From the NCBI GenBank assembly GCA_977017575.1, contig CDRNVI010000206.1, positions 1-43,380 of the forward strand: a stretch of DNA of 43,380 nt, in the 5' to 3' direction. Every line of letters begins with the position of its first letter. Position 1 is the first letter of the stretch. This document shows positions 1 through 33,470 of the stretch, piece by piece. The DNA comes from Paramoeba atlantica. Taxonomy: Eukaryota > Protista > Discosea. The notes under the pieces were generated by a model. The model did not search any database and had not been told where the DNA came from. It saw only the letters and a list, made by a program, of their open reading frames with translations. Both the position numbers and the translations under genes were made by a program.

Positions 1-698
1 CCTAAACCCTAAACCCTAAACCCTAAACCCTAACCTAAACCCTAAACCCTAAACCCTAAACCCTAAACCCTAAACCCTAAACCCTAAACCCTAAACCCCC
101 TAAACCCTAAACCCTAAACCCTAAACCCTAAACCCTAAACCCTAAACCCTAAACCCTAAACCCTAAACCCTAAACCCTAAACCCTAAACCCTAAACCCTA
201 AACCCTAAACCCTAAACCCTAAACCCTAAACCCTAAACCCTAAACCCTAAACCCTAAACCCTAAACCCTAAACCCTAAACCCTAAACCCTAAACCCTAAA
301 CCCTAAACCCTAAACCCTAAACCCTAAACCCTAAACCCTAAACCCTAAACCCTAAACCCTAAACCCTAAACCCTAAACCCTAAACCCTAAACCCTAAACC
401 CTAAACCCTAAACCCTAAACCCTAAACCCTAAACCCTAAACCCTAAACCCTAAACCCTAAACCCTAAACCCTAAACCCTAAACCCTAAACCCTAAACCCT
501 AAACCCTAAACCCTAAACCCTAAACCCTAAACCCTAAACCCTAAACCCTAAACCCTAAACCCTAAACCCTAAACCCTAAACCCTAAACCCTAAACCCTAA
601 ACCCTAAACCCTAAACCCTAAACCCTAAACCCTAAACCCTAAACCCTAAACCCTAAACCCTAAACCCTAAACCCTAAACCCTAAACCCTAAACCCTAA
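1..698. repeat. Telomeric repeat array (CCCTAAA)n / (TTTAGGG)n, left chromosome end
   Basis: About 99 tandem CCCTAAA units from base 1, C-rich on the + strand as expected for a left end. Two variant units occur near positions 28-39 and 96-104. The array ends abruptly at ...AAACCCTAA|TTAGAGGAGG. Confidence 0.99.
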
Positions 699-3600
699 TT
701 AGAGGAGGAGAATAAAAGAAAACAAAACATGAAAACAAACTGTTTCATATAACAGTTATGCAATGATTGTGGTGGTGATTAATGTGGCAATCCCAACTTC
801 AAACCCAAAGAGAGACCAAAAAAAAAAAGACAGCGAGAAAGGTATCCTATCAGTGGGTCCCTTCTCAAACGGAGGACTGGAGAAAGAGAGAAAAAGAAAG
901 AAAGGGGTTTAGTTGAATGGAGGGAGAAAAGGGAGGAGGGGTGAACACAAAGAAGGGGAGGGAGAATAAAAGAAAACAAATATCAAAAACAAACACTAAA
1001 ACCAATGTGATTCGCAACAACAATGTGACAATGGTGTGGAGGCAGTGATAAAAGGTTTCAAATTGTTGATTAAATATGTCACCGATAATCTCAGCGAACT
1101 GGAGAAAGAGAAAAAAGAAAGGATTTTTTAGTTAAAAGGAGAGAGGGGAGAAAAGGAGACAAGGGAGGGGGGGGGAGAACACAAAGAAGGGGAGAATAAA
1201 AGAAAACAAGTATGTGAAAAACAAACACAAAACTGATGATTCACAACAACAATGCGATGATGGTGGCAGTAGTAATCCAGGGCATATTTGTAAAGCACTC
1301 TACTGATTTAACAAACAATCTCTCGAGATTGATAAATCGATGTCCATTCACCTTGCAATCCGACACATAATCACTTTTGCGCAACAACATTCCAAGAGCT
1401 CTCTGCAACACAGTTGCTTGATCGTCACTCTAATGTTGTTGTCATTTTGATTATTGCATTGTGAAGAATCTTTTCTTCTGATACAAACCCTATATGCAAA
1501 AGTTTCAGAAGCTACTCTCTTTCCTTTAAAGAAATCATCACCACCCGAACCTTCTTCCTTTGCTCCCCTCACCCTTCCCTCTCTTTTCTTCTAAAAAGAC
1601 CAAAAAAAAAAAAAAAACCTCTTTGTGTGAAGAAGAAATCAGCAACAAACACACTCAATATTCCCTCTCTCCTCCTTTGTTGGTGTTGGTTATTGAGTTG
1701 TTCTCATTGTTGTCACACGTTTTATCACGTCCTCTTTTTTTGTTGGAAAGAGAGAAAAAGAAGGAATTCCCAATTAAATAATCTTTTTCCTCTAGGCCAA
1801 ATACGCAAGTTTGCAAATCTCCAAAGGATTAGTGGCAAATAAAAATTATCTCAATAAATTAATACCAAAAATAATTTTCTCATTACCAAGAATTTTCTTG
1901 ATTTGCTACCAGACCCAAAGTACTGAAATTATTCAACAGAAAACACCCAATTTTTTGGTCGATTGAATGACTGAACTTTTTTCAGGAAACTGAAAAGGGA
2001 AAGAAAAGAAAAAAGAAGGGATTAGTAATGTGTGTTACTATAGAGGAGGGAAATACAAAGAAGGAAGAGAATAAAAGAAAACAAACAAAAAAAAGAAAAC
2101 AAACACAAAACACTATAATTCACAACAACAACGATAATTGGTCAAGATGAAAAAATTATCGCTTCAAATCTTATCAATTAAAACCCAACAAACACACACA
2201 CAGGCGAGAGAGAGAGAACTCTGGAGAAAGAGAAAAGAGAAAAGATTAGTGTTAAAAAAGGAAGGAAGGGGAGGAGGGAAAGGAGAGGGATAAAATGAAT
2301 GTGGCAATCTTTATAATACATGCACACATCATTGATATTTGACAAACAACCTCTCAATAATCGATAAATTAGGGTGTCCATTCACCTTGCAATCCAACAC
2401 ACAAACACTTTCGTGCACACTCTCAACACTCTCCAAGAGTGTGCTTTGGGAGAGCAAAACGTAGCCAGGACCAAAAAATGGAGCCCACACCAGCAAGTTA
2501 GAGAAAGGCACTGGTTTGTCAAAGTAAAATCATGCACAGTTAATCCCAACTACTTCCAGGAGGAAACTCACGGGGGTTCCAGAGTTCCATCGAAAAATCC
2601 CAACTTCAAACCCAAAGAGAGACAATCAAAAAAAAAAAAACAGCGAAAAGGGTGTCCCCCCCTTGGTGTGTCCCTTCTGAGAAAAACAGAAACTGACTGG
2701 AGAAAGAAAGGAGTTTTATTGAATGGAGGGGGAAATATGAGGGGAAAAACACAAAGAAAAAGAATCAAAGAAAACATATATGACCAAAAACAAACACTAA
2801 AACCCAATGAAATTCACAACAACAACAACATGATGGTGGAAGTGGGGTGATAGAGCACAGAGCAGGGGGCATCCTCCGACAAACTCAACAATCAGACATT
2901 TACAAAAACAAACTCTCGGTTTAAGTTCTCCTTTTATATTAAGAATTCTATGAATTTCCAACAAACATCTTAACAACAAAGGAACAATACAACAGCAATT
3001 TGTGATGAAACACAAATAAAGACCATCCAAAATGCTCCCTAAACCCTTTTGGGAAAACCCGAAGGAAACACACAAAACAACACATCAAATCAGGAAGCAT
3101 CTTTGTGAGTCGCAACACACACACACACTTTGATATTTTTAACAAACAATCTTTTGATATATTGATAAAGGGTTTAGGGTGTCCATTCACCTTACAATTG
3201 GTGGGGGGAGGGGATGTGGCAGGAAGGAACTAAAAGGGAAAGAGAAAAGGAAAAGATTAGTGTTCAAAGGAATGAGGGAGGGAGAGAGGGGGGAAAAGAG
3301 GAAGAGAATAAAAGAAAACAAACATGAAAACAAAATGATTCATATTTAACAGTTATGCAACAATGGTGGTGGAGATCAATGGCAATCTTTGTGACATATT
3401 TGATAAACAATCTCTTGATATATTGATAATATTGGTGTCCATTCACTTTGCAATCCAACACACAAACCCTTGTCAATTAAAACTTCACAAACCCTGATGA
3501 GAACTGAAAGAGAAAAGAGAAAAGAGAAAAGAGAAAAGAGAAAAGAGAAAGGATTTCGTTCAGTTCAATGTAAGGGGGAAAAGGGAAGAAATACAAAGCA

Positions 3601-5820
3601 AAACAAAAACAAAACAAAAACAAAAATAAAACCAATGAATTTTACAACAATATATTATTATAGAAGTGGTGGATCAATCAAAACAAAAAAAAAAACAGAG
3701 AACTGCCAGTTCAAAAAACAGAAAAAGAGAGAGAAAAAACCAGATGATTGTTTGGGGCTTTTGAAAAATTATTGTCGAATATTTTAGGAATAACACGTCG
3801 TGAAACAGCAGCACACTTCCGGAACACAAGAAGTCAAGAAATTATCCAACAATAACAATGACATTTCTTTTTTTTTAAAAAAAAACATAATCAGGAAAAA
3901 AGAGAGAAAAGAGAGGGAAAAGAGAGGGAAAAGAGGAAAGAAAAAGAAAACCAGAAAAGGAGAGTGAACACACACCAACAAAGCCTTTGAAGAAGAGAAA
4001 CATGATTCTTTTTTTTAACAAATATATTTACTTGCTGATTACAAAACTCATTTCCCTTCGAAAAAAAAATCAGTTTGGAACGACAATTAAAAGAAAAGAA
4101 AAAGAAAGAGAAAGAGGAAAAAGAAGAAAAGAAAGAAAAGAAAAGAAAACCGAAAAAAACATTGTAAAAACTGTTCAAACTAAGGAAACAAAATTTTAGA
4201 ATCTTATTTGGTGAGGAGAAAGAGAACAAAAAGGACACCAAGAGGAGGGGGTAGGAGAAAACAAAAAGAAAACAGAAACAAAAAAGAAATGATCCATCAA
4301 TTGTCAAACGAATGGAGAGAAAAGAGAGAGAAAAGACAGTCAAACCAAAAAAAATCAAAACAACCACCTTTTATCACGAAAAGGAGGGGGGAACACAAAA
4401 GGAGGAGGAAAATAAAAGAAAACAAAAAAAAAGAAAACAAACACCAAACACCATGATTCGCAACAACGATAATTGGTAACAGCGAGATATTATTGCTTCA
4501 AACCTTATCAATTAAAACCCCAACAAACACCCACAAAGAGAGAGAGAGAACTCTGGAGAAAGAGAAAAGAGAAAAGATTAGTGTTAAAAGGAATGAGGGG
4601 GAGAGAGGGAGGAAAAAGAGGAAGAGAATAAAAGAAAACAAACCCTTCATATAACAATGCAACGATGGTGGTGGAGATCAATGGTTTCTTTGTGACACAC
4701 TGATATTTGACAAACAATCTCTCTTAATATTGATGTAATTCAACACACAAACACTTTTGCACGCAACAACAACACTCCCCAAGAGCTCTTTGCAATACAA
4801 CAGCAAAGTGTATTACTTGATCATCACCCAAAACCCTTTCAATCAAGACCCACATCTTGAATGTGGGAATAGCAGCAGCAGTAATAAGTGGTTTTAAAAT
4901 CCTTATCAATTAAAACACCTCACAAACCCTGATGAGAACTGAAAGAGAAAAGAGAAAAGAGAAAAGAGAAAAGAGAAAAGAGAAAAGAGAAAAGAGAAAA
5001 GAGAAAAGAGAAAAGAGAAAGGATTTCGTTCAGTTTGACAGAAGAAATACAAAACAAAACAAAAACAAAACAAAAACAAAAACAAAACCAATGAATTTTA
5101 TAATAATATATTATCGAGGTGGTGGATCAATCAAAACAAAAAAAAAACAGAGAACTGCTAGTTCAAAAAACAGAAAAAGAAAGAAGAAAGAGAGAGAAAA
5201 CCAGATGTTGTTTGGGGTTTTTGAAAAATTATTGTCGAATATTCGGAACAACACACGTCGTGAAACAGCAGCACACTTGTGTAACACAAGAAGTCAAAAA
5301 ATCATCCATCAACAATGATGACATCTCTCTCTTTTAAAAAAAACATAATCAGGAAAAAAGAGATAAAAGAGAGAAGGAGAGAGGAAAGATAAAAAAAAAC
5401 CAGAAAAGAGAGCGAACACACAATAACAACAAAGCCATTGAAGAAAAGAAATACGATTCTTTTTTTTTTAACAAATATATTTATTTCCTGATTACAAAAC
5501 TCATTCTCCCTTTGAAAAAAAATCAGTTTGGAACGACCAATTAAAAGAAAAGAAAAAAGAAAAGAGAAAAAAGAAGAAATGAAAGAAAAGAAAAGAACGG
5601 AAAAAAACTTGGTAAAAACTGTTCGAACCAAGGAAACAAAATTTCAGAATCTTATTTGGTGAGGAAAAAGAGAACAAAAAGTGCACCAAGAGGAGGGAGC
5701 AGGAGGAAACAAAAAGAAAACAGAAACAAAAAAGAAATGATCCATTGTCGATCAAACGAACGGAGAGAAAAGAGAGAGAAAAGACGGTCAAACCAAAAAA
5801 AACAAAACGACCACCTTTTC
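699..5820 (-). pseudogene. Degenerate array of exon/intron-like modules (unassignable pseudogene or subtelomeric repeat family)
   Basis: About 9 recurrences of a minus-strand donor-like GTTTGTTTTCTTTTATTCTC and acceptor-like TTTTCTCTTTCTCCAG pair, roughly 90-110 nt apart. A shared core GTGTCCATTCACCTTGCAATCC occurs at ~1340, 2375, 3180 and 3435. No sustained reading frame was found. Confidence 0.35.
3470..5820 (+). repeat. Older tandem duplication inside the duplicated block (two units, period ~1.43 kb)
   Basis: TCAATTAAAAC..CACAAACCCTGATGAGAACTGAAAGAG occurs at ~3473 and ~4908, followed by ~900 bp of colinear homology. The same pair is present in copy B at ~28523 and ~30840. Confidence 0.85.
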
Positions 5821-6051
5821 ACACGAAAAAGCAATTCATCATTTATTTTTAGCACTCTAAAATATACGTCAGTCTTTTTACTACCTTTCGGCTTTGGAGT
5901 AGATGAATTTTTATATTTTATTTTTTTATGTCTTTTTCAATAAAACGAAAATAACAAAAATACTCACAAGAAAATCTGATTCGATATTTTGCCACCCAAA
6001 AATCTTTTATTTTTTGTATTTTTTTTTGTTTTTCGCCTTGAAAAACATGCT

Positions 6052-8870
6052 GTTGCTTGTTCGAGGGGGATGGAGGGAGTCGCGGTCAGGGGGGCAAAGG
6101 GAAAAGACTTTTTTTGCTTCTTTCAAACAATTCTTTTTTTGTTTTCTTTGTGTGTGTAAAAAAAAGAGAAAAAGAGTTGATCTTGATGAGGTGAGAGATC
6201 GCTTCAAAGACCACACGCGGAGAGAGGAAGAAAGAATTGTGGTGTGGATTGCTCAGAACTCAGAACATTATCCCTCCCCTATGTGATCAGGTTTTCTTCT
6301 TTGTTTCCTCTCAGTGTTTTTTTTTTTTTTGTCCTTTCTCTCCTCTTTTCCCCCCTTTTTTTTTTGGTTTTTGATCTCTTTTCCTTTTGTTTGTGTGTCT
6401 TTTGTTTGTGTGTGTCTTTTGTTTGTGTGTCTTTTGTTCGCCACCCTAAATCCTTGTTTTTCACACTTGTTTTCGTCATGTTTATTTTTCCTTTCTTGGG
6501 TATCATGATGGATGAGGCTTGAGATGCGGTTCTCTTCATCCTTTTGTTTGTCTTGTCTTTTTTATTTGTTCTTCTTTCTTTGTTCTTTTGTTCGTTCTTT
6601 TCTTTATTGTCTTTTTGTGTCCTCTTTGCTCTTCCTTTTCCCCCTTTTCCCCCTTCCCTTTCACTCTCCCTTCCCTAAACCCTTTTCTGTTGCGAACCCC
6701 TACCTTGTTCTGTTGTCTTCTATTCATTTTGAAGTCTTTCTCACTCCTCTTTCCTGTCGAATCTCCCCCTGGTTGATTCTCCCCTCTTCTGTTTTTCTAC
6801 TGTCTCCTTTCTTATCTTTTCCTCAAAAATTTGTTTTCTCACTTTAATTGTTCTTTCTTATTTGGAGTGTTTTCCTCTTTTGTGTTTTTCCCTCTCTTTT
6901 GTCTTTCGTTGGTGCTTTGTGCTCCTTCAACCCTGCCTACTGTGTTTTGATTCATCCTTTTGTTTTTTGCCACATTTGATTTTTTTCTGTGTTTTCTCTC
7001 TTTGAATATTTTCTCTTTTGTTCAAAACCCTATTCTTTCTTTTGTTGTTGTTCCTTTTATTTGATATAAACCACACCTTCTGCTTTTTCGATTTGATCTT
7101 TGGATTGACTTTCGTTTATTGTTTTGTTGTTTTTCTGTGGAGATCTCATCAATCCTGACATTTTCCCTTTCCCCTCCCCCCAAATCTTCACTTCCCCCTC
7201 TTTTCCTTTTCTCTTTTGTTGATATCTCCCCATCTTTACTCTAATAACCTTATTCTCTCTCTTCTCTCTTTCTAAACCTTTTTTTCTTTCAATAGAGTGT
7301 AGTTGTGGGGCAGAGGAAGTTTTTCTCCTAATTTGTCATCATTGCAATCTTTTTCTCTTTCTTTTTTTTCAATCTCTTTTTTGCAAGTACTTTTTTCTTT
7401 TTTTTTTCATTTTTTCTTTCTCTTTCTCTCTTTTAAAGAAATAAAATAGAATGATCAATTATTGCTTGTTCGGGGGAGGGTGATGGAGGGAGTCAAAGTT
7501 AGGGGGGTGGCAAGGGGAAGAGACTTTTTTTTGCTTCTTTCATCAAACAACTCTTTTTTTGTTTTCTTTGTGTATGTAAAAAAAAGAGAAAAAGAGTTGA
7601 TCTTGATGAGGTGAGAGATTGCTTCAAAAACCACACGCGGAGAGAGAGGAAGGAAGAATTGTGGTGTGGATTGCTCAGAACATTATTCCTCCCCTATGTG
7701 ATCAGGTTTTTCTTCTTTGTTTCCTCTCAGTGTTTTTTTTTTTGTTTTGGTCCTTTCTCTCCTCTTCTCCCCCTTTCCTTTTTTTTTTGGGTTTTTGATT
7801 TCTTTTCCTTTTGTTTGTGTGTCTTTTGTTTTCTTTTATTCACCACCCTAAACCCTTGTTCGTCACACTTGTTTTCGTCATGTTTATTTTTCCTTTCTTG
7901 GGTATCATGATGGATGAGGCTTGAGATGTGGTTCTCTTCATCCTTTTGTTTGTCTTGTCTTTTTTATTTGTTCTTCTTTCTTTGTTTTTTTGTTCGTTCT
8001 TTTCTTTATTGTCTTTTTGTGTCTTCTTTGCTCTTCCCTTTTTCCCTTTTTCCCTTTTTCCCCTTTCCCTTTCCCCCTTATTCTGTATTTCAAATCTTTA
8101 CCTTGTTCTGTTGTCTTCTATTCATTTTGAAGTCTTTCTCACTCCTCTTTCCTGTTGAATCTCCCCCGTCGATTCTCCCCTCTTCTCCTTTCTTATCTTT
8201 TCCTCAAAAATTTGTGTTTTCTTCTCACTTTGATTGTTCTTTCTTATTTGGAGTGTTTTCCTCTTTTGTGTTTTTCCCTCTCTTTTGTCTTTCGTTGGTG
8301 CTTTGTGCTCCTTCAACCCTGCCTGCTGTGTTTTGATTTATCCTTTTCTTTTTTGCCACATTTGATTTTTTTCTGTGTTTTCTCTCTTTGAATATTTTCT
8401 CTTTTGTTCAAAACTCTATTCTTTCTTTTTTTCTTTTGTTGTTCCTTTTATTTGATATAAACCACACCTTCTGCTTTTTTTCAATTTGATCTTTGGATTG
8501 ACTTTCATTTATTGTTTTGTTGTTTATTTTCTGTGGGGATCTCATCAATCCTCTGACATTTTCCCTTTCCCCCCCTCCCCTCCCCCCCCCCAAAATCTTC
8601 ACTTCTCCCCTCTTTTCCTTTTCTCTTTCGTTGATATCTCCCCATCTTTACTCTAATAACCTTATTCTCTCTTTTCTCTCTTTTTAAATCTTTTTTTCTT
8701 TCAATAAAGTGTAGTTGTGGGGCAGAGGAAGTTTTTCTCCCCAAATTTGTCGTTGTTGCAATCTTTTTCTCTCTCTTTTTTTTCAATCTCTTTTGCAAGT
8801 ACTTTTTTCTTTTTTTTTCATTTTCTTTTCTCTTTCTCTCTTTTAAAGAAATAAAATAGAATGACCAATT
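6052..8870 (+). repeat. Tandem duplication of a ~1.41-kb unit (6052-7461 and 7462-8870), present once in copy B
   Basis: Both units begin TTGCTTGTTCG.GGG and contain GAGTTGATCTTGATGAGGTGAGAGAT and GGGTATCATGATGGATGAGGCTTGAGATG. Copy B has one unit at ~31955-33350. Confidence 0.92.
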
Positions 8871-15959: not shown

Positions 15960-18900
15960 TTTACTTCCAGCTTTCACAGTTTTTTCCCTCTCAGAACTTC
16001 GAACTCCCTCTCCTGATTCCCTCTTCCCCTTCCTCCTCATGAAGACAAAGACAAAGATGAAGACAAAGACAAAGACAAAGACGAAGACGAAGACAAAGAC
16101 GAAGACAAAGACGAAGACAAAAACGAAGACAAAGACAAAGACGAAGACAAAGATGAAGACAAAGACAAAGACAAAAGGGAGGGAGCAGGAGCAGCTCCTG
16201 CAGCAGGGCTTTTGCACCCCCAGCAATTCCAATGGTGGTATCCAACAGATTGTGGTCATAGAGGTGTTTCTCATAAGCAGCCACCATCTTAAACATTCTG
16301 AGGAGCAAGTGGGAACTGGACACGCAATTTGGTCTTCCAGGTGCTCATTTTGTTGAACCAAGGATTGCACTAACTCTTCTTTCCCTTTGAGGGCCCACAA
16401 GTCTCCAAATGATGAGCACAAAGAAGGCAGAGAAGAGAGGTTGAATTTTGTTGTTTTTTTGTTCATGGTTTGATCAAAGCCAGAAAGTCATCTTTGTAAA
16501 ACACAACCCCACAGATTGGTCATTATATTTCAGGGATTGTGGACGACCCACAGTTCCTTTCGGGACACTCCATGATCGATCAACAAGAAACCATTTCACC
16601 AACTCAAAAAATCCACGGGCAACAATGCAAGCATATTCCCAGAGACAAGGGAACCAGATTTTCCATCGAACCAAAGAAAAAATGTTTTCCACAATATTGG
16701 TGCCCAGAATGGAAGTCTTGGTCAATTCAGAGGAGCGGGTTGGGTGTCATCCAAAAAAATCTTTCAGATTCTTCATGGTGGTTATCACTTGTGTGTTAAA
16801 AGTTATTTAACACAAAATGCTTCTTGTTAGGACACCATTTTTTCCATTGCTGAAAAAGGTTCAAAACACTCTCAATCTCTTGGCATTGTGTTCAAACTTC
16901 AAAAGGCTATTGTCCGAAACAACCTGATAAACATTTCAAATTGCTCGCAAATAAAGACACAAGACAAGGCAAAAGTCCTTTTGTGTTGTCGTGAAGGATA
17001 TTGATATTTCGGTGTTTTTTGCGAATGATTCAAGGTCCTCAATGTGGTTGACTAATCGCAGTACAGGGGAAATGGCTTGTTTTGTCGGATGGATGAAAGA
17101 TTTCGAAATCAAAAAAATTTAGCAACTGACTGTTGTGCTTTTTCCAAATCAAAAAGAGAGCTCTTTCAAACTCAGCAAAAACACAAGTAGGCTCATCTCT
17201 GTTCTTTTCATCTCATTTTCATCAAAGATGACACCATCGTCACCCTTTTTCTTCTTCTCTTCCTTCTTCACCATTGCACCAGCACTGGGGACTTTCTTCA
17301 GCATCATCACCAACCATCATCATCATCAATTGGATAAAACATCCCCTCCAAACTAGTGAATGGGGGGGGATCATTATGGGAACCTCATCACCATCTTCCT
17401 CATCACCTTCTTCCTCATCACCAACAGTCAGTGGTACCGCCCTTCTTTGATCCATCGATGAGGGGGGAGGGGGGGGGGGCGATGGAACAAAGAAGAAGTT
17501 TACGCCATCGATTTTTTCTTCTTCTGTCGTTGGGCTTTCAACAGAGAGAGGAGGGAGTTGGTCAATAAAAAAAGAGGAAACTCAAGGCACTTGTTCAAGA
17601 GTTGGTTTCTCCCTGACTTCACCAAATGAACGTAATCGAAGATGTGCAGAATCTTACTCTTCTTTTTTTTAAGATTTGTGAGATACTTGCCCAACCCTTT
17701 GAAACCATCCATTGATGTCCATGTGACAAAAATCTCTTGTTTTTTTGAGAGCATCTTCGAGTTGTTCTACTTGTTTAAGCAATAATTGCTCTCCAGAAAG
17801 CCCAACTGTCAGGGAATAGGCCAGTTCAAGGGGCAGATAGTCCCACAATTTAAGATAAAGAAGAAGTGGTTCACCTTCTTTGCTAAGTCGTTCGCATATG
17901 TGAAATAATTCGAACTTCTGCTGCTGAAGTTCTCAACTTGAAGAGAAGAAACTCACAATATTTCCAACACTTGACCAATCAACCGATTTGATGAGTGAAG
18001 ATAAAAACCAACAACCCTGACCAAATTTCAATCTCATCAGAAACCAAACCTCCAAGAAATTTCGAATATTCCCTGTCCCCATTCAATTTTCGTTCATCCC
18101 CAAACATTTTTCGAATTGCCTCACATTTCAGTGGAAGGTCCTCTTGAGAGTAAGGATCAATTGGGGGAAGAAACCTTTCATCTTCATAAGAGAAGGAGCA
18201 AAAAGATTGAATTTCGAGGGGGTTCAATTTCCAAATAGCCACCTTTGTTTCCTTGCCCTTGAAAACCTACTCCTACGAGTGTTCGAATTGTCTTCTTCTC
18301 ACCAACAAATAAGATGGAAGAGAAAAAGTGGAGAACATCTGGATTCCATCAGGATTGCTCGACCATCAGGTGCTGCCAATGCCTTCAGTTGTTGCTCAAT
18401 GAAGGGTGTAATGAAATGATTGAAACCAACGATCACCATACTTTTTGTTCACTCTTTTCACTAAATCGAGGAGAGACTCATTATGATTTAATCCAAACAG
18501 CATCCTCATTTTGTTCCGAATTATCCACAGCCAAATATGTTGTTGGTGATGAATCACGCTCTTCAATTGTTTTTCGGCACTTGTTCTCACAATTTCCCTT
18601 TCACAAGTTCCTTGATAAAAAACTTTTAAAAAACTTTCTAAATCTCTTTTTTTTTTTGAAAAGAATAAAAAATAAAAAAATAAAATCTCTCTTCTGAAGA
18701 AAATAAAATAAAATAAAAACCTGAGTTGTTTGCTGGACAAAGCCTTCTCAAGTATGCCAATGAGCATCACAGGAATCACAAAGGAGGTTATACTTCCCAT
18801 TTGTAATTTTTGGGAGACTATTCAACCAAACTGGATGGAAAAATTGAAAGAACACATTTGGGATCCATCCTCAATCAGACGACCAATACTCTGTGGGAGA

Positions 18901-20270
18901 TTGACCTCAACAAAATAACAACACCTGTTCTTTGAAGTAAAATTCAAATGTTTCTTCTTAAAGAGAGAGTTGAAGAAGAGAAGAGACAACTTCATCACCA
19001 TCAGATATTTGAGAAAACTGGGGGGGAGAGGGGAATCAAGCTTTACCTCCTTGGAGAAATTCTGGGAGAGGACAACAGAAGACAGAGGCCCAAACACAGA
19101 GTTTTTGGAAGGTGCATTCCCATAACAAGACAACAAACACTGATATCCTCCTGGTTTTAGAACAACTGTGTTGTTGACAAAATGAAAGAGTTTCATTAAA
19201 ATTTTGAAAAGAGGTTCCTCTTTCAAAAACTATCATGTAAGTTGACATCTTTCAAGGTCTTTCTGAATTGCCTGTGAAAAGACAGCATTCGCAAAGAGAC
19301 GGTTCGAAACCAAAGGATGCAACTTTTCCTCCCACTTCGATTGCTCAATCAAACCTTGCGAGTATTCTCGAAAAACAAGAATTGCTCTCCCTTTAAGGGA
19401 GGCAGAAGGCGAAGAAGAAGTTCGCAACAACCTCCCGACAAAACCTCGATGCACAAACCGATTCTCATTTGCTTTCTCCCAAATGTGAGACCCTTCAATT
19501 TTCTTTGAACAAAACCGCTGGTAGAAATCTTCATCATCACAAATCACCTGATTCAGACCCCACCAATATTCCAATCCTTCACAATCACCAAGATCAATCA
19601 CAACAATCGTTTTAACTTGTGTCTCATTAAGATGTCTTGACATATCATCCATACATACAATCAATTCCGTACAAAGCCGAGGAAGATGGTCAATGGAAGA
19701 AAGATTTTGGGCACGTCGATATAACTCGCGTAATTCATTGTGTAAATTCACATCCACAACTAATGTTTGAGCAAAAATCAAAGAATCCCAGGAGCAGTGT
19801 TAAAGCAATTGCTGTTCGAAACCCTTGTTGATCCAATATCTGTTACCTTCCCAATAAATCGCCCACCAAACAAAGGCAAGAGAGCAAGAACCAATTTCTT
19901 TCTTTTTTCATCATCAAGGCAAAGGGTCTCATCTGAGAGTTTTTGTGGTTCATACAAATTCAACTCTTGTTGTTGTTGTTGCCCTTCACAACCATTCGAT
20001 TCATTCAATTCATTCGATTCAAGAAATAATGATGATAATATCAATGATGAGCACTTTGCTTCTTTGTTGCTAGTAGCAGCAGCAGTTCGAATTGGAGGAG
20101 GGAATCAAGAGGGAACAGGAGGTGGGGTGGTGTGACCCCCAGCAGCAGCCACAGAGGATGTTGAGGATGACCCACCAACCACCACCACCATCACAACATT
20201 CAATTGGCAAAAATTTGTTCTCAGCTACCATTGCTTTTTTGGCTCCCATTTTAATCCAATCAGAGGCCAA
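15960..20270 (-). pseudogene. P-element-superfamily (THAP9/P-like) DDE transposase pseudogene with introns and a C-terminal C2H2 zinc finger
   Basis: Ordered motifs on the - strand: LVSDEIEI (~18030, first D), SMDG (~17710, second D), HIFDYVHLVKSGRNQLL (~17620, the D-x2-H-L-x-K-x2-RN signature of P transposases) and LGTNIVENIFSLVR (~16680, catalytic E). After these comes CPVPTC-SRM-F-KMVAA-Y-EK-H-LYD-H (16253-16322), broken by one frameshift. Multiple stops and frameshifts are present. The upstream ORF pieces 18396-20270 are unassigned. Confidence 0.8.
16039..16175. repeat. Hexamer microsatellite (AAGACA/AAGACG)n
   Basis: About 22 units, open in several frames (KT, FV, LC and ED/KD repeats). 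It lies in the 3' tail of the P-like pseudogene. Confidence 0.95.
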
Positions 20271-23280: not shown

Positions 23281-23329
23281 AATCCAGTTTTTTATTTTCG
23301 GATTTTTGTGAAAAGATGAGAGAATCTTG

Positions 23330-24429
23330 GTTCTGTTCAGAACGGTTGGATTTGGGGCAGGTCCAGGGAAGCAAACTCGATCATGTCAAGTTCAGACAAA
23401 CAAAAAGTGCTTTCTTCCATATTACTGGAATCAAAGTCTCAGTGACTGTCTCGAACACCTGACATTTCAAATCTCGAAGCAATCATTACAATTCTCCTCA
23501 CCAAACTTTTTCCTGATCTTCTCCAGGATCACATTTCCTGACATCCTCCTTCTTTGTTTTCAAAAGTCACTCTTACTTAGTCTCTCTTATCCTTGATCAC
23601 CTTCAGAGGGACCGTTTCAAGATTCGAAAGTTTTATTTTTTGGTTCACAACGTGCAATTCGGCCAGCAGGGCTTCCCACCCGACCATCAGAAGAATACAA
23701 GAAATTGGCCAAGAATGGAGGTTGTGGCCTTCATGTGGATGCAGAAGATCCAATTTACAACTCAGGTTTATTGATGTATTATTCTTGTTTCGTTGAACCA
23801 GATGTTGAAGATTGTGATCGTGATCATCCATTACCACAAAATGATTTGGTTTGTTTCCAACATCAGAATGGTGAAAGGGGGGCACGAATTCAAACTATGC
23901 ATCCTAACTTTCTATGTCTTGCATTCCACCAATCTTGGAAGTGTCACGGCACAGTTTTTCAAGAGAATGATGTTTTTCAAGAAGGTATCCATGGTTTCCG
24001 GGTGGTGACTTATCCAATCAAAGCAGTCGAAGATCTTGTTGAACATTGTCAAGATGAAGCCCCATTTCAGTCTGTCCTCCAACAATGGAAGACTGCCCTT
24101 CTAAATTCCTTTTCTCCAAAAAAATTGCAATGTGGCTTTGATCGAATCTTCAACAAAACTTTGGAATAAAGTAACCCTTTCCTTCTTTCAACTTCAACTA
24201 CTTTCAAGAATGTGATAAATCTTTTTTGGCAACATGTTTTTCTCTTTCAAATAATTTGACTCAAAGCAAAAACTACAAAAATAAATTCTCTTCACATTAT
24301 TGGCAAACTTCAAGGAGAAATAGGGACTCCCGCACCACGGGGTGGTTCTGCAATATTTGCAAAAAGCAAAAGCTTTGGAAAAGTAAAAAAGAAATTCGAA
24401 GCGGAACAACACATATTTTACCCATATAA
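23330..24429 (+). pseudogene. Putative TET/JBP-like 2OG-Fe(II) dioxygenase fused to a degenerate PHD finger
   Basis: Open frame 23597-24169 contains GLHVDAED (HxDxxD, 23732), GARIQTMHPNFLCLAFHQSWKCHGT (second His at 23945) and GFRVVTY. Removing a 38-nt GT..AG interval (24171-24208) puts CDKSFLATC...GWFCNICKK (PHD-like) in the same frame, except for one TAA at 24167. The upstream piece RTVGFGAGPG..PYYWN is frameshifted. Confidence 0.45.
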
Positions 24430-25738: not shown

Positions 25739-28700
25739 TTAGGAGAGGAGAATAAAAGAAAACAAAACATGAAAACAAACTGTTTCATATAACAGTTATG
25801 CAATGATTGTGGTGGTGATTAATGTGGCAATCCCAACTTCAAACCCAAAGAGAGACCAAAAAAAAAAAGACAGCGAGAAAGGTATCCTATCAGTGGGTCC
25901 CTTCTCAAACGGAGGACTGGAGAAAGAGAGAAAAAGAAAGAAAAGGGTTTAGTTGAATGGAGGGAGAAAAGGGAGGAGGGGTGAACACAAAGAAGGGGAG
26001 GGAGAATAAAAGAAAACAAATATCAAAAACAAACACTAAAACCAATGTGATTCACAACAACAATGTGATGATGGTGTGGAGGCAGTGATAAAAGGTTTCA
26101 AATTGTTGATTAAATATGTCACCGATAATCTCAGCGAACTGGAGAAAGAGAAAAAAGAAAGGATTTTTTAGTTAAAAGGAGAGAGGGGAGAAAAGGAGAC
26201 AAGGGGGAGGGAGGGGGGGGGAACACAAAGAAGGGGAGGGAGAATAAAAGAAAACAAGTATGTGAAAAACAAACACAAAACTGATGATTCATAACAACAA
26301 TGCGATGATGGTGGCAGTAGTAATCCATGGCATATTTGTAAAGCACTCTACTGATTTAACAAACAATCTCCTCTCGATATTGATAAATCGATGTCCATTC
26401 ACCTTGCAATCTGACACACAATCACTTTTGCACAACAACATTCCAAGAGCTCTCTGCAACACAGTTGCTTGATCGTTACTCTAATGTTGTTGTCATTTCA
26501 GTTATTGTGTCGCGAAGAATCTTTTCTTCCAATACAAACCCTATATGCAAAAGTTTCAGAAGCTACTCTCTTTCCTTTAAAGAAATCACCACCACCCGAA
26601 CCTTCTTCCTTTGCTTCCCTCACCCTTCCCTCTCTTTTCTTCTAAAAAGACCAAAAAAAAAAAAAGAACCTCTTTGTGTGAAGAAGAAATCAGCAACAAA
26701 CACACTCAATATTCCCTCTCTCCTCCTTTGTTGGTGTTGGTTATTGAGTTGTTTTCATTGTTGTCACACGTTTTATCGCGTCCTCTTTTTTTGTTGGAAA
26801 GAGAAAAAGAAGGAATTCCCAATTAAATAATCTTTTTCCTCTAGGCCAAATACGCAAGTTTGCAAATCTCCAAAGGATTAGTGGCAAATAAAAATTATCT
26901 CAATAAATTAATACCAAAAATAATTTTCTCATTACCAAGAATTTTCTTGATTTGCTACCAGACCCAAAGTACTGAAATTATTCAACAGAAAACACCCAAT
27001 CTTTTGGTCGATTGAATGATTGAACTTTTTTCAGGAAACTGAAAAGGGAAAGAAAAGAAAAAAGAAAGGATTAGTAATGTGTGTTACTATGGAGGAGGGA
27101 AATACAAAGAAGGAAGAGAATAAAAGAAAACAAACAAAAAAAAGAAAACAAATACAAAACCCACCATGATTCACAACAACAACGATAATTGGTAAAGGTG
27201 AAAAAATTATCGCTTCAAACCTTATCAATTAAAACCCAACAAACACATACACAGGCGAGAGAGAGAGAACTCTGGAGAAAGAGAAAAGAGAAAAGATTAA
27301 TGTTAAAAGGAAGGAAGGGGAGGAGGGAAAGGGGAGGGATAAAATGAATGTGGCAATCTTTATAATACATGCACACATTGATATTTGACAAACAACCTCT
27401 CAATAATCAATAAGGGTTTAGGGTGTTCATTCACCTTGCAATCCAACATACACAAACACTTTCGTGCACAACACTCTCAACACTCTCCAAGAGTGTGTTT
27501 TGGGAGAGCAAAACGTAGCCAGGATCAAAAAATGGAGTCCACACCAGCAAGTTAGAGAAAGGCACTGGTTTGTCAAAGTAAAATCATGCACAGTTAATCC
27601 CAACTACTTCCAGGAGGAAACTCACGGGGGTTCCAGAGTTCCATCAAAAAATCCCAACTTCAAACCCAAAGAGAGACAACCAAAAAAAAAAAACAGCGAA
27701 AAGGGTGTCCCCTTGGTGTGTCCCTTCTGAGAAAAACAGAAACTGACTGGAGAAAGAAAGGGTTTCATTGAATGGAGGGGGAAATATGAGGGGAAAAACA
27801 CAAAGAAAAAGAATCAAAGAAAACATATATGACCAAAAACAAACACTAAAACCCGATGAGATTCACAACAACAACAACATGATGGTGGAAGTGGGGTGAT
27901 AGAGCACAGAGCAAGGGGCATCCTCCGACAAACTCAACAATCAGACATTTACAAAAACAAACTCTCGGTTTAAGTTCTCCTTTTATATTAAGAATTCTAT
28001 GAATTTCCAACAAACATCTTAACAACAAAGGAACAATACAACAGCAATTTGTGATGAAACACAAATAAAGACCATCCAAAATGCTCCCTAAACCCTTTTG
28101 GGAAAACCCAAAGGAAACACACAAAACAACACATCAAATCAGGAAGCATCTTTGTGAGTCGCAACACACACACACACTTTGATATTTTTAACAAACAATC
28201 TCTCGATATATTGATAAAGGGTTTAGGGTGTCCATTCACCTTACGATTGGTGGGGGGAGGGGATGTGGCAGGAAGGAACTAAAAGGGAAAGAGAAAAGGA
28301 AAAGATTAGTGTTCAAAGGAATGAGGGAGGGAGAGAGGGGGGAAAAGAAGAAGAGAATAAAAGAAAACAAACATAAAAACAAAATGATTCATATTTAACA
28401 GTTATGCAACGATGGTGGTGGAGATCAATGGCAATCTTTGTGACATATTTGATAAACAATCTCTCGATATATTGATAATATTGGTGTCCATTCACTTTGC
28501 AATCCAACACACAAACCCTTGTCAATTAAAACTTCACAAACCCTGATGAGAACTGAAAGAGAAAAGAGAAAAGAGAAAAGAGAAAAGAGAAAAGAGAAAG
28601 AATTTCGTTCAGTTCAATGTAAGGGGGAAAAGGGAAGAAATACAAAGCAAAACAAAAACAAAACAAAAACAAAAATAAAACCAATGAATTTTACAACAAT

Positions 28701-31700
28701 ATATTATTATAGAAGTGGTGGATCAATCAAAACAAAAAAAAAAACAAACAACTGCCAGTTCAAAAAACAGAAAAAGAGAGAGAGAAAACCATTTTTTTTT
28801 TTTAAGGTTCAGACACCAGGTGCCATTTATTAGAGTTAAAAACCATCTCTAGGATGGAAAAGAGGGGGGAAGAAAGGGGAGGGGGAGGGAAGATAAATTA
28901 AGAGTTAGATCCAAAGATCTCTTCAGCATGGGATGCATTGGAGTTTCTTTACCAACTTTAGTTCTCACTAAGGGGTCTGCGTTTGATTGTTCGCCTTCTA
29001 AAACCAGGGAGTGAATTCAGTTTGGAGGTTTCTATGAAGTTAATTACATTCCTTCGAAAATCTTCCTCGATAAAGCTCCTCACCAGATTGCTCTCTTGGG
29101 ACTGATGGAACCATCCTTGGATATCTTTAGTAATTATTACAGGGAGAATTAGAGCATTCTCAAGAGCAGTTTGGGCCGGAAACAAAACATGGAGGGTTGT
29201 CACCGTGTTTCCTTAGAATTTCCTTACAAAATTCCCTGGGGGGATGGGGAAAGTCCAGTCATGGGTGAGGGGGGAATTGATCCAGTTCCACAGGGTTGAA
29301 TTCAAAATAATCCACTCTTCACTGGTTTCTGCAACATGTTGTGATCTTGGATCCCAATGATGGTCATTCACAGCACATGTTCCATCCTCTTTAGACCAAC
29401 TTGCAGCAGTTGCAATTGCATCAGCTCGCTTGTTAAGCTCTCGGGGTACATGGGTGAATTCTATCTCATCAAAGCACATTGCTAACTTACGGATTTCACA
29501 AAGTAGTTCATTCAAGGCATAGTTTTTGATGGCATGGGTTTTGGGTGCAGCCTTGGTGAGAATCATACAATCCCCGACAACTTCAATCTCATTCGTCATT
29601 GATCTGGCACATTGCATTCCTTTCAAACAGCCTGTGAATTCACCAATATTGTTGGACCCAAGAGGGATGGTTTCAAACCCACCACGAGAGAGAGAAAACC
29701 AGATGATTGTTTGGGGCTTTTGAAAAATTATTGTCGAATATTTTAGGAATAACACGTCGTGAAACAGCAGCACACTTCCGAAACACAAGAAGTCAAGAAA
29801 TTATCCAACAATAACAATGACATTTCTCTTTTTTTAAAAAAAAAAACATAATCAGGAAAAAAAAGAGAAAAGAGAGGGAAAAGAGGAAAGAAAAAGAAAA
29901 CCAGAAAAGGAAAGTGAACACACAACAAAGCCTTTGAAGAAGAGAAACATGATTCTTTTTTTTAACAAATATATTTACTTGCTGATTACAAAACTCATCT
30001 CCCTTCGAAAAAAAAATCAATTTGGAACGACAATTAAAAGAAAAGAAAAAGAAAGAGAAAGAGGAAAAAGAAGAAAAGAAAGAAAAGAAAAGAAAACTGA
30101 AAAAAACATTGTAAAAACTGTTCAAACTAAGGAAACAAAATTTTAGAATCTTATTTGGTGAGGAGAAAGAGAACAAAAAGGACACCAAGAGGAGGGGGTA
30201 GGAGGAAACAAAAAGAAAACAGAAACAAAAAAGAAATGATCCATCAATCGTCAAACAAACGGAGAGAAAAGAGAGAGAAAAGATAGTCAAACCAAAAAAA
30301 ATCAAAAACAACCACCTTTTATCACGAAAAGGAGGGGGGAACACAAAGAAGGAGGAGAATAAAAGAAAACAAAAAAAAAAGAAAACAAACACCAAACACC
30401 ATGATTCGCAACAACAATAATTGGTAACGGTGAGATATTATTGCTTCAAACCTTATCAATTAAAACCCCAACAAACACCTACAAAGAGAGAGAGAGAACT
30501 CTGGAGAAAGAGAAAAGAGAAAAGATTAGTGTTAAAAGGAATGAGGGGGAGAGAGGGAGGAAAAAGAGGAAGAGAATAAAAGAAAACAAACCCTTCATAT
30601 AACAATGCGATAATGGTGGTGGAGATCAATGGTTTCTTTGCGACACACTGATATTTGACAAACAATCTCTCTTAATATTGATGCAATTCAACACACAAAC
30701 ACTTTTGCATGCAACAACAACACTCCACAAGAGCTCTTTGCAACGCAACAGCAAAGTGTATTGAAAACCCTTTCAATCAAGACCCACATCTTGAATGTTG
30801 GAATAGCAGCAGTAATAATAAGTGGTTTTAAAATCCTTATCAATTAAAACACCTCACAAACCCTGATGAGAACTGAAAGAGAAAAGAGAAAAGAGAAAGG
30901 ATTTCGTTCAGTTCGACGGAAAGAAATACAAAACAAAACAAAAACAAAACAAAAACAAAACAAAAACAAAAACAAAAACAAAAACAAAACTAATGAATTT
31001 TACAATCATATATTATCGAGGTGGTGGATCAATCAAAACAAAAAAAAACAGAGAACTGCCAGTTCAAAAAACAGAAAAAGAGAGAAGAAAGAGAGAAAAC
31101 CAGATGTTGTTTGGGGTTTTTGAAAAATTATTGTCGAATATTCGGAACAACACGTCGTAAAACAGCAGCACACTTGCGTAACACAAGAAGTCAAAAAATT
31201 ATCCATCAACAATGATGACATCTCTTTCTTTAAAAAAAAACATAATCAGGAAAAAAGAGAGAAAAGAGAGAAGGAGAGAGGAAAAATAAAAGAAAACCAG
31301 AAAAGGAGAGCGAACACAACAACAAAGCCATTGAAGAAAAGAAATACGATTCTTTTTTTTTAACAAATATTTATTTCCTGATTACAAAACTCATTCTCCC
31401 TTCGAAAAAAAATCAGTTTGGAATGACCAATTAAAAGAAAAGAAAAAAGAAAAAAGAAAAAGAAAAAAGAAACAAAAGAAAAGAAAACCGGAAAAAAACT
31501 TAGTAAAAACTGTTCGAACCAAGGAAACAAAATTTCAGAATCTTATTTGGTGAGGAAAAAGAGAACAAAAAGTGCACCAAGAAGAGGGGGCAGGAGGAAA
31601 CAAAAAGAAAACAGAAACAAAAAAGAAATGATCCATTGTCGATCAAATGAATGGAGAGAAAAGAGAGAGAAAAGACGGTCAAACCAAAAAAAACAAAACG

Positions 31701-33470
31701 ACCACCTTTTCACGCGAAAAAGCAATTCATCGTTTATTTTTAGCACTCTAAAATATACGTCATCCTTTTTACTACCTTTCGGCTTTGGAGTAGATGAATT
31801 TTTATATTTTATTTTTTATGTTTTTTTCAATAAAACGAAAATAACAAAAATACTCACAGGAAAATCTGATTCGATATTTTGCCGCCCAAAAATCTTTTAT
31901 TTTTTGTTTTTTTTTTTGTTTTTTTTTTTGTTTTTTGCCTTGAAAAACATGCTGTTGCTTCTTCGAGGGGGAGGGTGATGGAGGGAGTCGCAGTCAAGGG
32001 GGGCAAAGGGAAAAGGCTTTTTTTTGCTTCTTTCAAACAATTCTTTTTTTGTTTTCTTTGTGTGTGTAAAAAAAAGAGAAAAAGAGTTGATCTTGATGAG
32101 GCGTGAGATCACTTCAAAGACCACACGCGGAGAGAGGAAGGAAGAATTATGGTGTGGATTGCTCAGAACATTATCCCTCCCCTATGTGATCAGGTTTTTC
32201 TTCTTTGTTTCCTCTCAGTGTTTTTTTTTTTGTTTTGGTCCTTTCTCTCCTCTTTTCCCCCCCTTTTTTTTTGGTTTTTGATCTCTTTTCCTTTTGTTTG
32301 TGTGTCTTTTGTTTGCCACCCTAAACCCTTGTTTGTCACACTTGTTTTCGTCATGTTTATTTTCCTTTCTTGGGTATCATGATGGATGAGGCTTGAGATG
32401 CGGTTCTCTTCATCCTTTTGTTTGTTTTGTCTTTTTTATTTGTTCTTCTTTCTTTGTTCTTTTGTTCGTTCTTTTCTTTGTTGTCTTTTTGTGTCCTCTT
32501 TGCTCTTCCTTTTCCCCCTTTTCCCCCTTCCCTTTCACTCTCCCTTCCCTAAACCCTTTTATGTTGTGAACCCCTACCTTGTTCTGTTGTCTTCTATTCA
32601 TTTTGAAGTCTTTCTCACTGCTCTTTCCTGTCGAATCTCCCCCGTCGATTCTCCCCTCTTCTGTTTTTCTCTTGTCTCCTTTCTTACCTTTTCCTCAAAA
32701 ATTTGTTTTCTCACTTTGATTGTTCTTTCTTATTTGGAGTGTTTTCCTCTTTTGTGTTTTTCCCTCTCTTTTGTCTTTCGTTGGTGCTCTCTGTGCTCCT
32801 TCAACAACAACCCTGCCTGCTGTGTTTTGATTCATTTTTGTTTTTTGCCACATTTGATTTTTTTTCTGTGTTTTTTCTCTTTGAATATTTTCTCTTTTGT
32901 TCAAAACTATTCTTTCTTTCTTTTGTTGTTGTTCCTTTTATTTGATATAAAACACCTTCTGCTTTTTCAATTTGATCTTTGGATTGACTTTCATTTATTG
33001 TTTTGTTGTTTTTCTGTGGAGATCTCATCAATCCTCTGACATTTTCTCTTTCCTCCCCCTCCTCCCCCCCCCAAATCTTCACTTCCCCCCTCTTTTCCTT
33101 TTCTCTTTCATTGATATCTCCATCTTTACTCTAATAACCTTATTCTCTCTCTTCTCTCTAAACCTTTTTTTCTTTCAATAGAGTGTAGTTGTGGGGCAGA
33201 GGAAGTTTTTCTCCTAATTTGTCGTCGTTGCAATCTTTTTCTCTTTCTTTTTTTTTCAATCTCTTTTGCAAGTACTTTTTCTTTTTTTTTCATTTTCTCT
33301 TTCTCTTTCTCTTTCTCTCTTTTAAAGAAATAAAATAGAATGATCAATTGTTGCTGCTGTGTTGTTGTTGTGGTCCATTCCCCCCCAAAAAAAAATATTG
33401 TTGCTTTGTACGAATCATTTGAGTGCTGCTATATTAGGTTTACTTCTTTTGTGGTAATTGTTGTTGTTGA
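25739..33470 (+). repeat. Subtelomeric segmental duplication, internal copy (B)
   Basis: Colinear with 699-9020. It lacks the 1.41-kb tandem duplication, carries a unique LINE insertion, and its module array continues leftwards to ~25590, beyond the point where copy A is capped by telomere. Confidence 0.96.
28792..29685 (-). mobile_element. 5'-truncated non-LTR retrotransposon (LINE) with archaeal/plant-type RNase H, poly(A) tail and 16-bp TSD
   Basis: TSD GAGAGAGAGAAAACCA at 28776-28791 and 29686-29701; T12 at 28792-28803 (poly(A) on -). The ORF reads GSNNIGEFTGCLKGMQCA...IEVVGDCMIL...FDEIEFTHVPRELNKRADAIA, matching the NNxAE / GDS / HVPRExNxxAD motifs of RNase HI of the Rv2228c/RVT_3 type. 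The empty site is at ~3726-3742 in copy A. One in-frame TAA at 29213 separates it from a same-frame continuation to 28958. Confidence 0.93.

What the first reader, a model, noticed from the sequence alone, without database searches (positions are those of the whole stretch)
23330..24429. Candidate TET/JBP-like DNA-base dioxygenase fused to a PHD finger
Seen: HVDAED, then a G-x-hydrophobic strand leading to HGT, then RVVTY. The spacing resembles the HxDxxN/D ... HxT ... RxSxVFY pattern of TET/JBP enzymes, although the Arg is shifted two residues from the canonical position. A 38-nt intron-like segment would fuse it in frame to a PHD-like CDKSFLATC...WFCNIC, with one stop in between. Established: TET/JBP enzymes oxidise 5mC or T and are often transposon-borne or fused to chromatin readers in protists and fungi. 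Inference: a histone-reading DNA-modifying enzyme family exists in this organism, with a decayed copy here.
Basis: partly seen in the sequence, partly recalled or inferred. Interest (0 to 1): 0.75.

Follow-up and report, generated by a model that had tools for sequence, protein, structure and literature searches.

The report
Dead TET/JBP-like dioxygenase gene relic
This stretch is a broken, non-functional leftover of a DNA-base-oxidase-like enzyme gene, copied among chromosome ends of a trypanosome-like protist; it belongs to a protein family that no database has named, and the claimed fusion to a PHD finger at this site is not real.

Summary

The window copy is dead. It is 5'-truncated, has two frameshifts (~23455, +T at 23567) and two in-frame TGAs. 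All eight copies in the genome are broken, lie in mosaic subtelomeric duplications, and diverge neutrally.

The PHD fusion through a 38-nt intron is not supported. The downstream piece matches no PHD model, a stop precedes the proposed intron, and the organism (JBP1, JBP2, 181 spliced-leader motifs) looks kinetoplastid-like. One branch of the family does carry a true PHD finger, but N-terminally.

The scan noted transposase-plus-dioxygenase blocks on other pieces of this genome (s1-386220, s1-386223). I found that linkage inconstant.

The parts
23330..23455 (+). N-terminal conserved block of the domain (FRTVGFGAGPGKQTRS...LPYYWNQSLSDCLE), read in frame 0. It corresponds to the family motif G.Y.E.G.G..G...S...PY.RN.
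   Evidence: Family profile A2 matches window 23339-24061 over profile positions 9-256. Score against relative P0005 is 89 in frame 0, against 21-22 in the other frames.
23455..23458 (+). Approximate position of frameshift 1, shared by all copies in the genome.
   Evidence: The best frame switches from offset 0 to offset 2 here. The copies show no variation at this point.
23458..23566 (+). Helical linker segment (PDISNLEAIITILLTKLFPDL...), homologous to relatives only in frame offset 2. It contains TGA 23539-23541, which is CGA in copies L002-L004.
   Evidence: Score 72 in offset 2 against 20 and 29 in the other frames, with EAIITIL identical to P0005. Copy alignment. T>C at 23539 in other isolates.
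23567..23567 (+). Frameshift 2: an extra T present in the window, C142 (L002) and L012, and absent from C159 (L003) and both C202 copies (L004, L008).
   Evidence: Nucleotide alignment of the copies. 'Left out 1' at 23567 in runs X2 and X3.
23594..23596 (+). In-frame TGA stop. It is CGA (Arg) in copies L002 and L003, in P0001 and in three other sequencing runs.
23597..24169 (+). 190-codon open frame holding the catalytic beta-core and C-terminal helices. Residues: H46 (23732-34), D48 (23738-40), D51 (23747-49), distal H117 (23945-47), R135 (23999-24001), Y139 (24011-13). Stop TAA at 24167-24169.
   Evidence: AlphaFold model with pLDDT 83.6, mostly beta. Foldseek hits are almost all 2OG oxygenases.
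24170..24429 (+). Downstream non-coding DNA that holds the supposed PHD-like string. It is not part of the domain. A recurrent rearrangement breakpoint lies at about 24303-24330.
   Evidence: No PHD match. Breakpoints.

Best explanation
Window 23330-24169 (+) is a pseudogene. It is the 5'-truncated, twice frameshifted, stop-interrupted catalytic domain of an unnamed family of 2-oxoglutarate/Fe(II) dioxygenases. By predicted fold, that family's nearest relatives are the TET/JBP DNA-base oxidases. Intact members would bind Fe(II) through the HxD and distal His (H46, D48, H117 in window-ORF numbering) and 2-oxoglutarate through R/K135. They would most likely hydroxylate a methyl group on a DNA base (5mC or T); that substrate is inferred, not shown. 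The relic was already broken before it was copied among chromosome ends as part of larger subtelomeric duplication blocks, and it now drifts neutrally. It is not fused to a PHD finger here. Shown: homology, conserved residues, fold class, lesions, neutral divergence, subtelomeric setting. Inferred: TET/JBP-clade affinity (moderate structural margins only) and a nucleic-acid substrate.
Confidence: 0.7

Rival explanations
1. The domain is a relic of a 2OG/Fe(II) oxygenase that does not act on nucleic acids, for example a prolyl-hydroxylase-like or other protein or small-molecule hydroxylase. The TET/JBP resemblance would then reflect only the shared double-stranded beta-helix core.
For: PHD2/EGLN1 tops the Foldseek E-value ranking for the beta-core. 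One family member weakly hits 2OG-FeII_Oxy_3, a P4H-type model. The window-only model gives non-specific cupin matches. There is no sequence-level link to Tet_JBP.
Confidence: 0.2
2. The dioxygenase was cargo of a P-element-type DNA transposon, as TET/JBP genes are in fungal transposons. The copies would then reflect transposition and not segmental duplication.
For: A decayed transposase-like region lies 3 kb upstream (15960-20270; note s1-405894), and the pair recurs on C142. Earlier notes on other pieces of this genome describe such blocks (s1-386220, s1-386223). Fungal precedent: PMC12730594. A recurrent breakpoint lies at about 24303-24330.
Against: The linkage is inconstant. Transposase-like copies on C165 (95%) and C138 (72-77%) have no dioxygenase match, and the dioxygenase copies on C159 and C202 lack the transposase. 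The copies share at least 14 kb of collinear flank at the same 95-97% identity, as segmental duplication predicts. No terminal repeats or constant ends were identified. Pfam P-transposase model PF21787 found nothing in the genome (its control also rang nowhere, so this is weak).
Confidence: 0.12
3. This is a live gene. The frame is spliced through a 38-nt intron to a C-terminal PHD finger, giving a histone-reading DNA oxidase.
For: A GT...AG segment of 38 nt exists at 24171-24208, and the WFCNIC string resembles the last Cys pair of a PHD finger. Another isolate has an uninterrupted 280-codon frame (P0001).
Against: The TAA at 24167-24169 lies before the proposed donor site. There is no PHD match at E<=10 or E<=1 and only 4 Cys plus 1 His where a PHD finger needs 8 ligands. 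There is no similarity to a true family PHD. Contigs from other isolates show no joint at that position. The organism is kinetoplastid-like. There is no ATG, there are two frameshifts, and divergence is neutral. P0001's uninterrupted frame still has its middle ~37 codons out of the ancestral frame.
Confidence: 0.02

Closest known systems
TET/JBP family of 2OG/Fe(II) DNA-base dioxygenases (Pfam PF12851; NgTET1, human TET2, Coprinopsis CcTet, Chlamydomonas CMD1, kinetoplastid JBP1 and JBP2)
   Same: Predicted double-stranded beta-helix with N-terminal helical and strand elements. HxD...H...basic-residue signature with the same HxDxxD spacing as JBP1 and JBP2. These enzymes give the best structural matches in three searches. 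One branch is fused to a chromatin-reader domain (PHD), as many eukaryotic TET/JBP proteins are.
   Different: Pfam Tet_JBP does not detect it, and hhalign against JBP1/JBP2 does not support it. It has its own N-terminal block (G.Y.E.G.G..G...PY.RN) and core motifs (GGRxxRIxTM, HGSVFP). The HxD-to-distal-His spacing is longer (71 against 50 residues in JBP1). The basic residue sits two positions closer to the conserved Tyr (R-x-V-x-Y against R-x-S-x-V-x-Y) and is Lys in some members. No activity is known.
AlkB family (E. coli AlkB, NMAD-1, ALKBH1/3/5, FTO)
   Different: Lower Z and fewer aligned residues than TET/JBP. No hit to Pfam 2OG-FeII_Oxy_2.
HIF prolyl hydroxylase PHD2/EGLN1 and P4H-type oxygenases (PF13640)
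   Same: The beta-core superposes, giving the best Foldseek E-values (5e-4 to 4e-3) over about 140-150 columns. One member grazes PF13640.
TET/JBP genes carried by fungal DNA transposons (KDZ and others; PMC12730594)
   Same: Multi-copy, decaying dioxygenase genes lying near a transposase-like region.
   Different: Linkage to the transposase is inconstant here, and the copies are explained by subtelomeric segmental duplication. Pfam 2OG-FeII_Oxy_6 finds nothing in this genome.

Membership tests
2OG/Fe(II) dioxygenase superfamily (double-stranded beta-helix) | DSBH (jelly-roll) fold | tested here: met
   Models have pLDDT 83.6 and pTM 0.76. Nearly all top Foldseek and VIA matches are 2OG oxygenases or cupins.
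2OG/Fe(II) dioxygenase superfamily (double-stranded beta-helix) | HxD/E...H iron-binding triad plus a basic residue for the 2OG C5 carboxylate | tested here: met
   H46, D48 and H117 are invariant in 27 sequences; R or K at position 135 is near-universal.
TET/JBP family (Pfam PF12851) | Significant match to the Tet_JBP sequence profile | tested here: not met
   The PF12851 search of the genome at E<=10 finds only JBP1 and JBP2. None of 20 family members hits it at E<=10.
TET/JBP family (Pfam PF12851) | Profile-profile homology to bona fide TET/JBP domains | tested here: inconclusive
   hhalign of A2 against JBP1+JBP2 aligns only the HxDxxD motif (19 columns, probability 1.3%). The JBP profile had only 2 sequences.
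TET/JBP family (Pfam PF12851) | Closest structural neighbours are TET/JBP enzymes over the whole domain | tested here: met
TET/JBP family (Pfam PF12851) | Oxidation of 5mC or thymine in DNA | not testable with these tools
   This needs a biochemical assay of an intact member.
PHD finger (PF00628) at window 24211-24426 | C4HC3 zinc-ligand pattern and a profile match | tested here: not met
   No PHD hit at E<=10 or E<=1. Only 4 Cys and 1 His are suitably placed. No similarity to the family's true PHD in P0058.
Functional gene (as opposed to pseudogene) | Uninterrupted frame with a start codon, and purifying selection among copies | tested here: not met
   Two frameshifts, two TGAs, no ATG and 5' truncation. 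Every genomic copy has stops. Substitutions are spread evenly over codon positions.

The most novel reading that the evidence does not exclude
The relic marks a third, unrecognised lineage of TET/JBP-like DNA-base dioxygenases, beside JBP1 and JBP2, that once acted in a kinetoplastid-like protist. Intact versions survive in haptophytes (Prymnesium parvum KAL1506953.1) and many uncultured protists, some of them PHD-fused. There they may write or erase an as yet unmapped oxidised DNA base in a chromatin-targeted way.
Probability: 0.35. Interest if true: 0.65.

Novelty: new variant of a known kind. Interest (0 to 1): 0.42.

Why it matters
The locus itself is a dead gene of no functional consequence. 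Following it up exposed a family of dioxygenases that Pfam does not recognise. The family has a TET/JBP-like predicted fold and is spread across protists (about 43 clusters at 50% identity), with a PHD finger in one branch. If intact members oxidise DNA bases, they would extend the known repertoire of eukaryotic DNA-modification enzymes, for example in ecologically important haptophytes. The relic's position in subtelomeres of a base-J-making organism also shows how such genes are lost.

Tried and rejected
- Pfam on the three pieces of the locus found nothing. PDB sequence searches with the ORF and with the family profile found nothing meaningful (the only hit is a designed TIM barrel at E 0.04).
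- The language-model atlas suggested GT-B glycosyltransferases or Asp1 (score 0.90, 134 shared features). I rejected this because the predicted fold is a beta-helix, not a Rossmann fold.
- I first dismissed the upstream 90 codons as junk because two gene calls differed there. The profile search and the frame analysis showed they are homologous but frameshifted, so I corrected that reading.
- RNA evidence: the one possible RNA run (X5) laid nothing, and the other runs are DNA-like contigs. Transcription and the intron were therefore not testable, and no joint was seen at 24170/24209.
- hhalign against JBP1/JBP2 was inconclusive.
- VIA search with the window-only model was non-discriminating.
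- Pfam PF21787 (P-transposase) and PF20515 (fungal TET-type) searches of the genome found nothing, and their controls rang nowhere either, so this carries little weight.
- Rfam on the window and on the spliced-leader loci found nothing relevant.
In scripts, stops were read as X.
- Two literature searches found no description of this family.

Full report
**1. Observation**

The window is eukaryotic and subtelomeric. It opens with a 697-bp CCCTAAA array and is rich in CT/GA microsatellites, which flank the finding on both sides.

- HVDAED: H46, D48 and D51 of the 190-codon open frame 23597-24169.
- HGT: H117.
- RVVTY: R135 to Y139.

CDKSFLATC...WFCNIC lies in another frame at 24211-24426. A 38-nt GT...AG segment lies at 24171-24208.

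**2. A real protein family with conserved catalytic residues**

Pfam and PDB sequence searches of the ORF found nothing. The word-based search found only two near-identical proteins.

An exhaustive phmmer search of 1.84 billion representatives found 43 proteins at E<=1e-3, 13 of them at E<=1e-10. They are typically 30-40% identical, and in longer proteins the domain is usually C-terminal.

In the 27-sequence alignment:
- H46, D48, D51 and H117 are invariant.
- Q18, R22, G57, Y62, D83, G92 and Y139 are at least 90% conserved.
- Position 135 is R or K.

The family consensus is GGSxLHVDxxD...DLxVFxxxxGGRxxRIxTM...HLHGSVFP...G..R/KxVxY. Further upstream lies a block G.Y.E.G.G..G...S...PY.RN.

The only named member is a hypothetical protein of the haptophyte Prymnesium parvum (KAL1506953.1). 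The rest are unnamed sequences from metagenome or transcriptome assemblies.

Pfam does not cover the family: 19 of 20 members have no hit at E<=10, and one grazes 2OG-FeII_Oxy_3 at 3.8e-4.

**3. Fold**

AlphaFold2 with the family alignment gave a confident, mostly beta model of the window ORF (pLDDT 83.6, pTM 0.71). It also gave a usable model of the full domain of relative P0009 (pLDDT 75, pTM 0.76).

Foldseek against the PDB:
- For the window ORF the matches were weak, but nearly all were 2OG/Fe(II) oxygenases: NMAD-1, AlkB, PHD2, CcTet, ALKBH7 and Tpa1.
- For the full domain, PHD2 led by E-value over about 140-150 core columns. The longest and best-superposing matches were NgTET1 (238-243 columns, TM 0.40/0.44) and CcTet.

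The exhaustive VIA-align search of 48,161 chains gave this order:

|---|---|---|
| NgTET1 | 9.0 | 166 |
| Chlamydomonas CMD1 | 8.4 | 195 |
| human TET2 | 8.1 | 184 |
| CcTet | 7.4 | 164 |
| AlkB | 6.4 | 148 |
| NMAD-1 | 6.1 | 150-152 |
| FTO | 5.7 | 147 |
| prolyl hydroxylases | about 5.3-5.5 | 141 |

The ESM Atlas shape search put a 95% Tet_JBP cluster first (TM 0.51/0.70, 182 aligned residues, rmsd 3.4). Another Tet_JBP cluster scored TM 0.50, and the basidiomycete 2OG-FeII_Oxy_6 cluster scored TM 0.51 over 201 aligned residues. P4H-type clusters scored 0.36-0.37.

Caveats:
- The margin over AlkB is about 2 units.

The DSBH 2OG-oxygenase fold is therefore well supported. The TET/JBP-clade affinity is the best-supported reading but not a proven one.

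**4. Sequence-level relation to TET/JBP**

The genome has canonical TET/JBP genes, so I could compare directly. PF12851 finds four loci, in two near-identical pairs:
- A JBP1 orthologue with Tet_JBP plus the J-binding DB_JBP1 domain. That J-binding domain matches the solved JBP1 DNA-binding domain 2xse at E 1.9e-41.
- A JBP2 orthologue with Tet_JBP plus an SNF2 helicase.

PF12851 does not detect the finding's locus at E<=10.

JBP1 and JBP2 read HTDxGD where the family reads HVDxxD, which is the same HxDxxD spacing. hhalign aligns exactly that motif and nothing else (19 columns, probability 1.3%). With a two-sequence JBP profile this test is inconclusive.

The family has R-x-V-x-Y where JBP has R-x-S-x-V-x-Y.

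**5. The copy is a pseudogene, and so are all its sisters**

The family profile matches window 23339-24061 over profile positions 9-256 of 284, reading through a TGA.

Comparison with the closest outside relative, P0005 (about 62% identical over the shared part), shows three segments in different frames:

| Segment | Best frame | Score | Other frames |
|---|---|---|---|
| 23330-23455 | offset 0 | 89 | about 21 |
| 23455-23568 | offset 2 | 72 | 20 and 29 |
| 23567 onward | offset 0 | 145 | 21 and 25 |

In the middle segment, EAIITIL is identical to P0005.

Lesions in the window copy:
- A frameshift near 23455, shared by every copy.
- An extra T at 23567, present in the window, C142 and the near-identical contig L012, and absent from C159 and both C202 copies.
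- TGA 23539-23541 in the ancestral frame.
- TGA 23594-23596. Both TGAs are CGA in some sister copies and other isolates.
- 5' truncation. Residues 1-101 of P0005 (HPxTGDP...) have no counterpart, the frame hits TGA at 23309, and there is no ATG.

All eight loci in the genome carry stops, deletions or both. Examples are a 99-bp deletion replaced by 15 nt in C143, C144 and C164 and a 725-bp deletion in the second C202 copy.

Among the copies, substitutions fall evenly on codon positions:
- L003: 11/8/6
- L004: 5/7/3
- L002: 4/4/3
- L005: 9/8/7

Divergence inside the ORF equals that outside (for example 25/573 against 20/577). That is neutral drift.

The relative on L031 is also interrupted, by a stop, a CT-rich insert and a frame change.

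**6. Setting**

The copies share kilobases of flank at about 95-97% identity:
- C142 is collinear with the window over at least 14 kb.
- On C159 the block ends in a TTTAGGG array about 1 kb beyond the relic.
- C202 has two fragments beside an internal CCCTAAA array.

This is a subtelomeric duplication mosaic.

A decayed transposase-like region lies upstream (15960-20270; no ORF of 200 aa or more). Earlier notes from other pieces of this genome describe transposase-plus-dioxygenase blocks. When I tested the linkage, it did not hold. Transposase-like copies on C165 and C138 have no dioxygenase, and the dioxygenase copies on C159 and C202 have no transposase. Transposon cargo, which is known for fungal TET/JBP genes (PMC12730594), therefore remains a minor rival.

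**7. The PHD and intron claim**

The evidence is against it:
- The downstream piece has no PHD hit at E<=10 or E<=1.
- It has only four Cys and one His in place of eight ligands.
- It resembles neither the family's true PHD (E 0.36) nor the Cys-rich tails of relatives (E 2.2).
- The TAA (24167-24169) precedes the proposed donor site, so splicing would not remove it.
- No joint is seen at that position in contigs of other isolates. None of those runs is confirmed RNA, so this is weak evidence.
- The genome carries JBP1 and JBP2, and 181 copies of a kinetoplastid-type spliced-leader motif against 0 for the control. From general knowledge, this points to a trans-splicing euglenozoan in which cis-introns are very rare.

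P0058 has a genuine PHD finger (27.7 bits against a cut-off of 24, residues 118-164), and P0024 and P0033 have weaker ones. All are N-terminal to the dioxygenase domain.

**8. Verdict**

The stretch is a decayed domain of a TET/JBP-like 2OG/Fe(II) dioxygenase. It has no PHD fusion here, and there is no functional family of this kind in this genome. As a locus it is ordinary: a subtelomeric pseudogene. The wider family is an unnamed, Pfam-invisible relative of TET/JBP and is worth a biochemical test.

Noticed in passing
window 1-697; G000:C159:55374-55947; G000:C202:1408-2037: The telomere repeat is the 7-mer CCCTAAA/TTTAGGG. From memory, trypanosomatids use TTAGGG, although the genome otherwise looks kinetoplastid-like (JBP1, JBP2, spliced-leader motif). 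C202 carries an internal array followed by more subtelomeric blocks.
   Followed up: partly
G000 genome-wide, e.g. C23:255060-255081 (L035:1501-1522): The kinetoplastid-type spliced-leader core CAGTTTCTGTAC[C/T]TTGTTG|GTA occurs 181 times (control 0). The copies are dispersed over many contigs and not in one tandem array. Rfam has no matching family.
   Followed up: partly
G000:C3:218187-218660 and C30:803409-803882; C39:574702-575160 and C40:275206-275664: Intact intronless JBP1 (891 aa; Tet_JBP plus DB_JBP1) and JBP2 (1041 aa; Tet_JBP plus SNF2) orthologues. Each is present as two near-identical copies on different contigs, which suggests two haplotypes or a duplicated chromosome set in the assembly.
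   Followed up: partly
window 24058-24158 and 24303-24330: Recurrent rearrangement points. A 99-bp deletion replaced by 15 nt (AGTCGAAAAGTCGAG) occurs in C143, C144 and C164 and in contigs of other isolates. Several copies and read contigs break at about 24303-24330.
   Followed up: partly
window 698-8870 versus 25770-33375: A large internal duplication within the window at about 90-96% identity. The second copy is interrupted at 28792-29685 by an insert that recurs on C142 (33596-34487) at 98.7% identity. This is consistent with the LINE and empty-site note s1-405841.
   Followed up: no
L031:1-2537 (ENA ERZ24894578 contig): A Ty3/gypsy-type retroelement (RVT_1, RNase H, integrase, chromodomain) lies about 3.5 kb upstream of the closest outside relative of the dioxygenase relic. 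That relative is itself interrupted by a CT-rich insert.
   Followed up: no
L033:12421-13147 (Prymnesium parvum CM083873.1): A SET-domain gene lies 1.2 kb downstream of the only named intact family member (P0033, which has a weak N-terminal PHD-like segment). This is an anecdotal chromatin context.
   Followed up: no
window 15960-20270: The putative P-type transposase region has no ORF of 200 aa or more in this window. It has copies on C142 and C165 (95-96%) and a diverged copy on C138 (72-77%). Pfam PF21787 finds nothing in the genome.
   Followed up: partly
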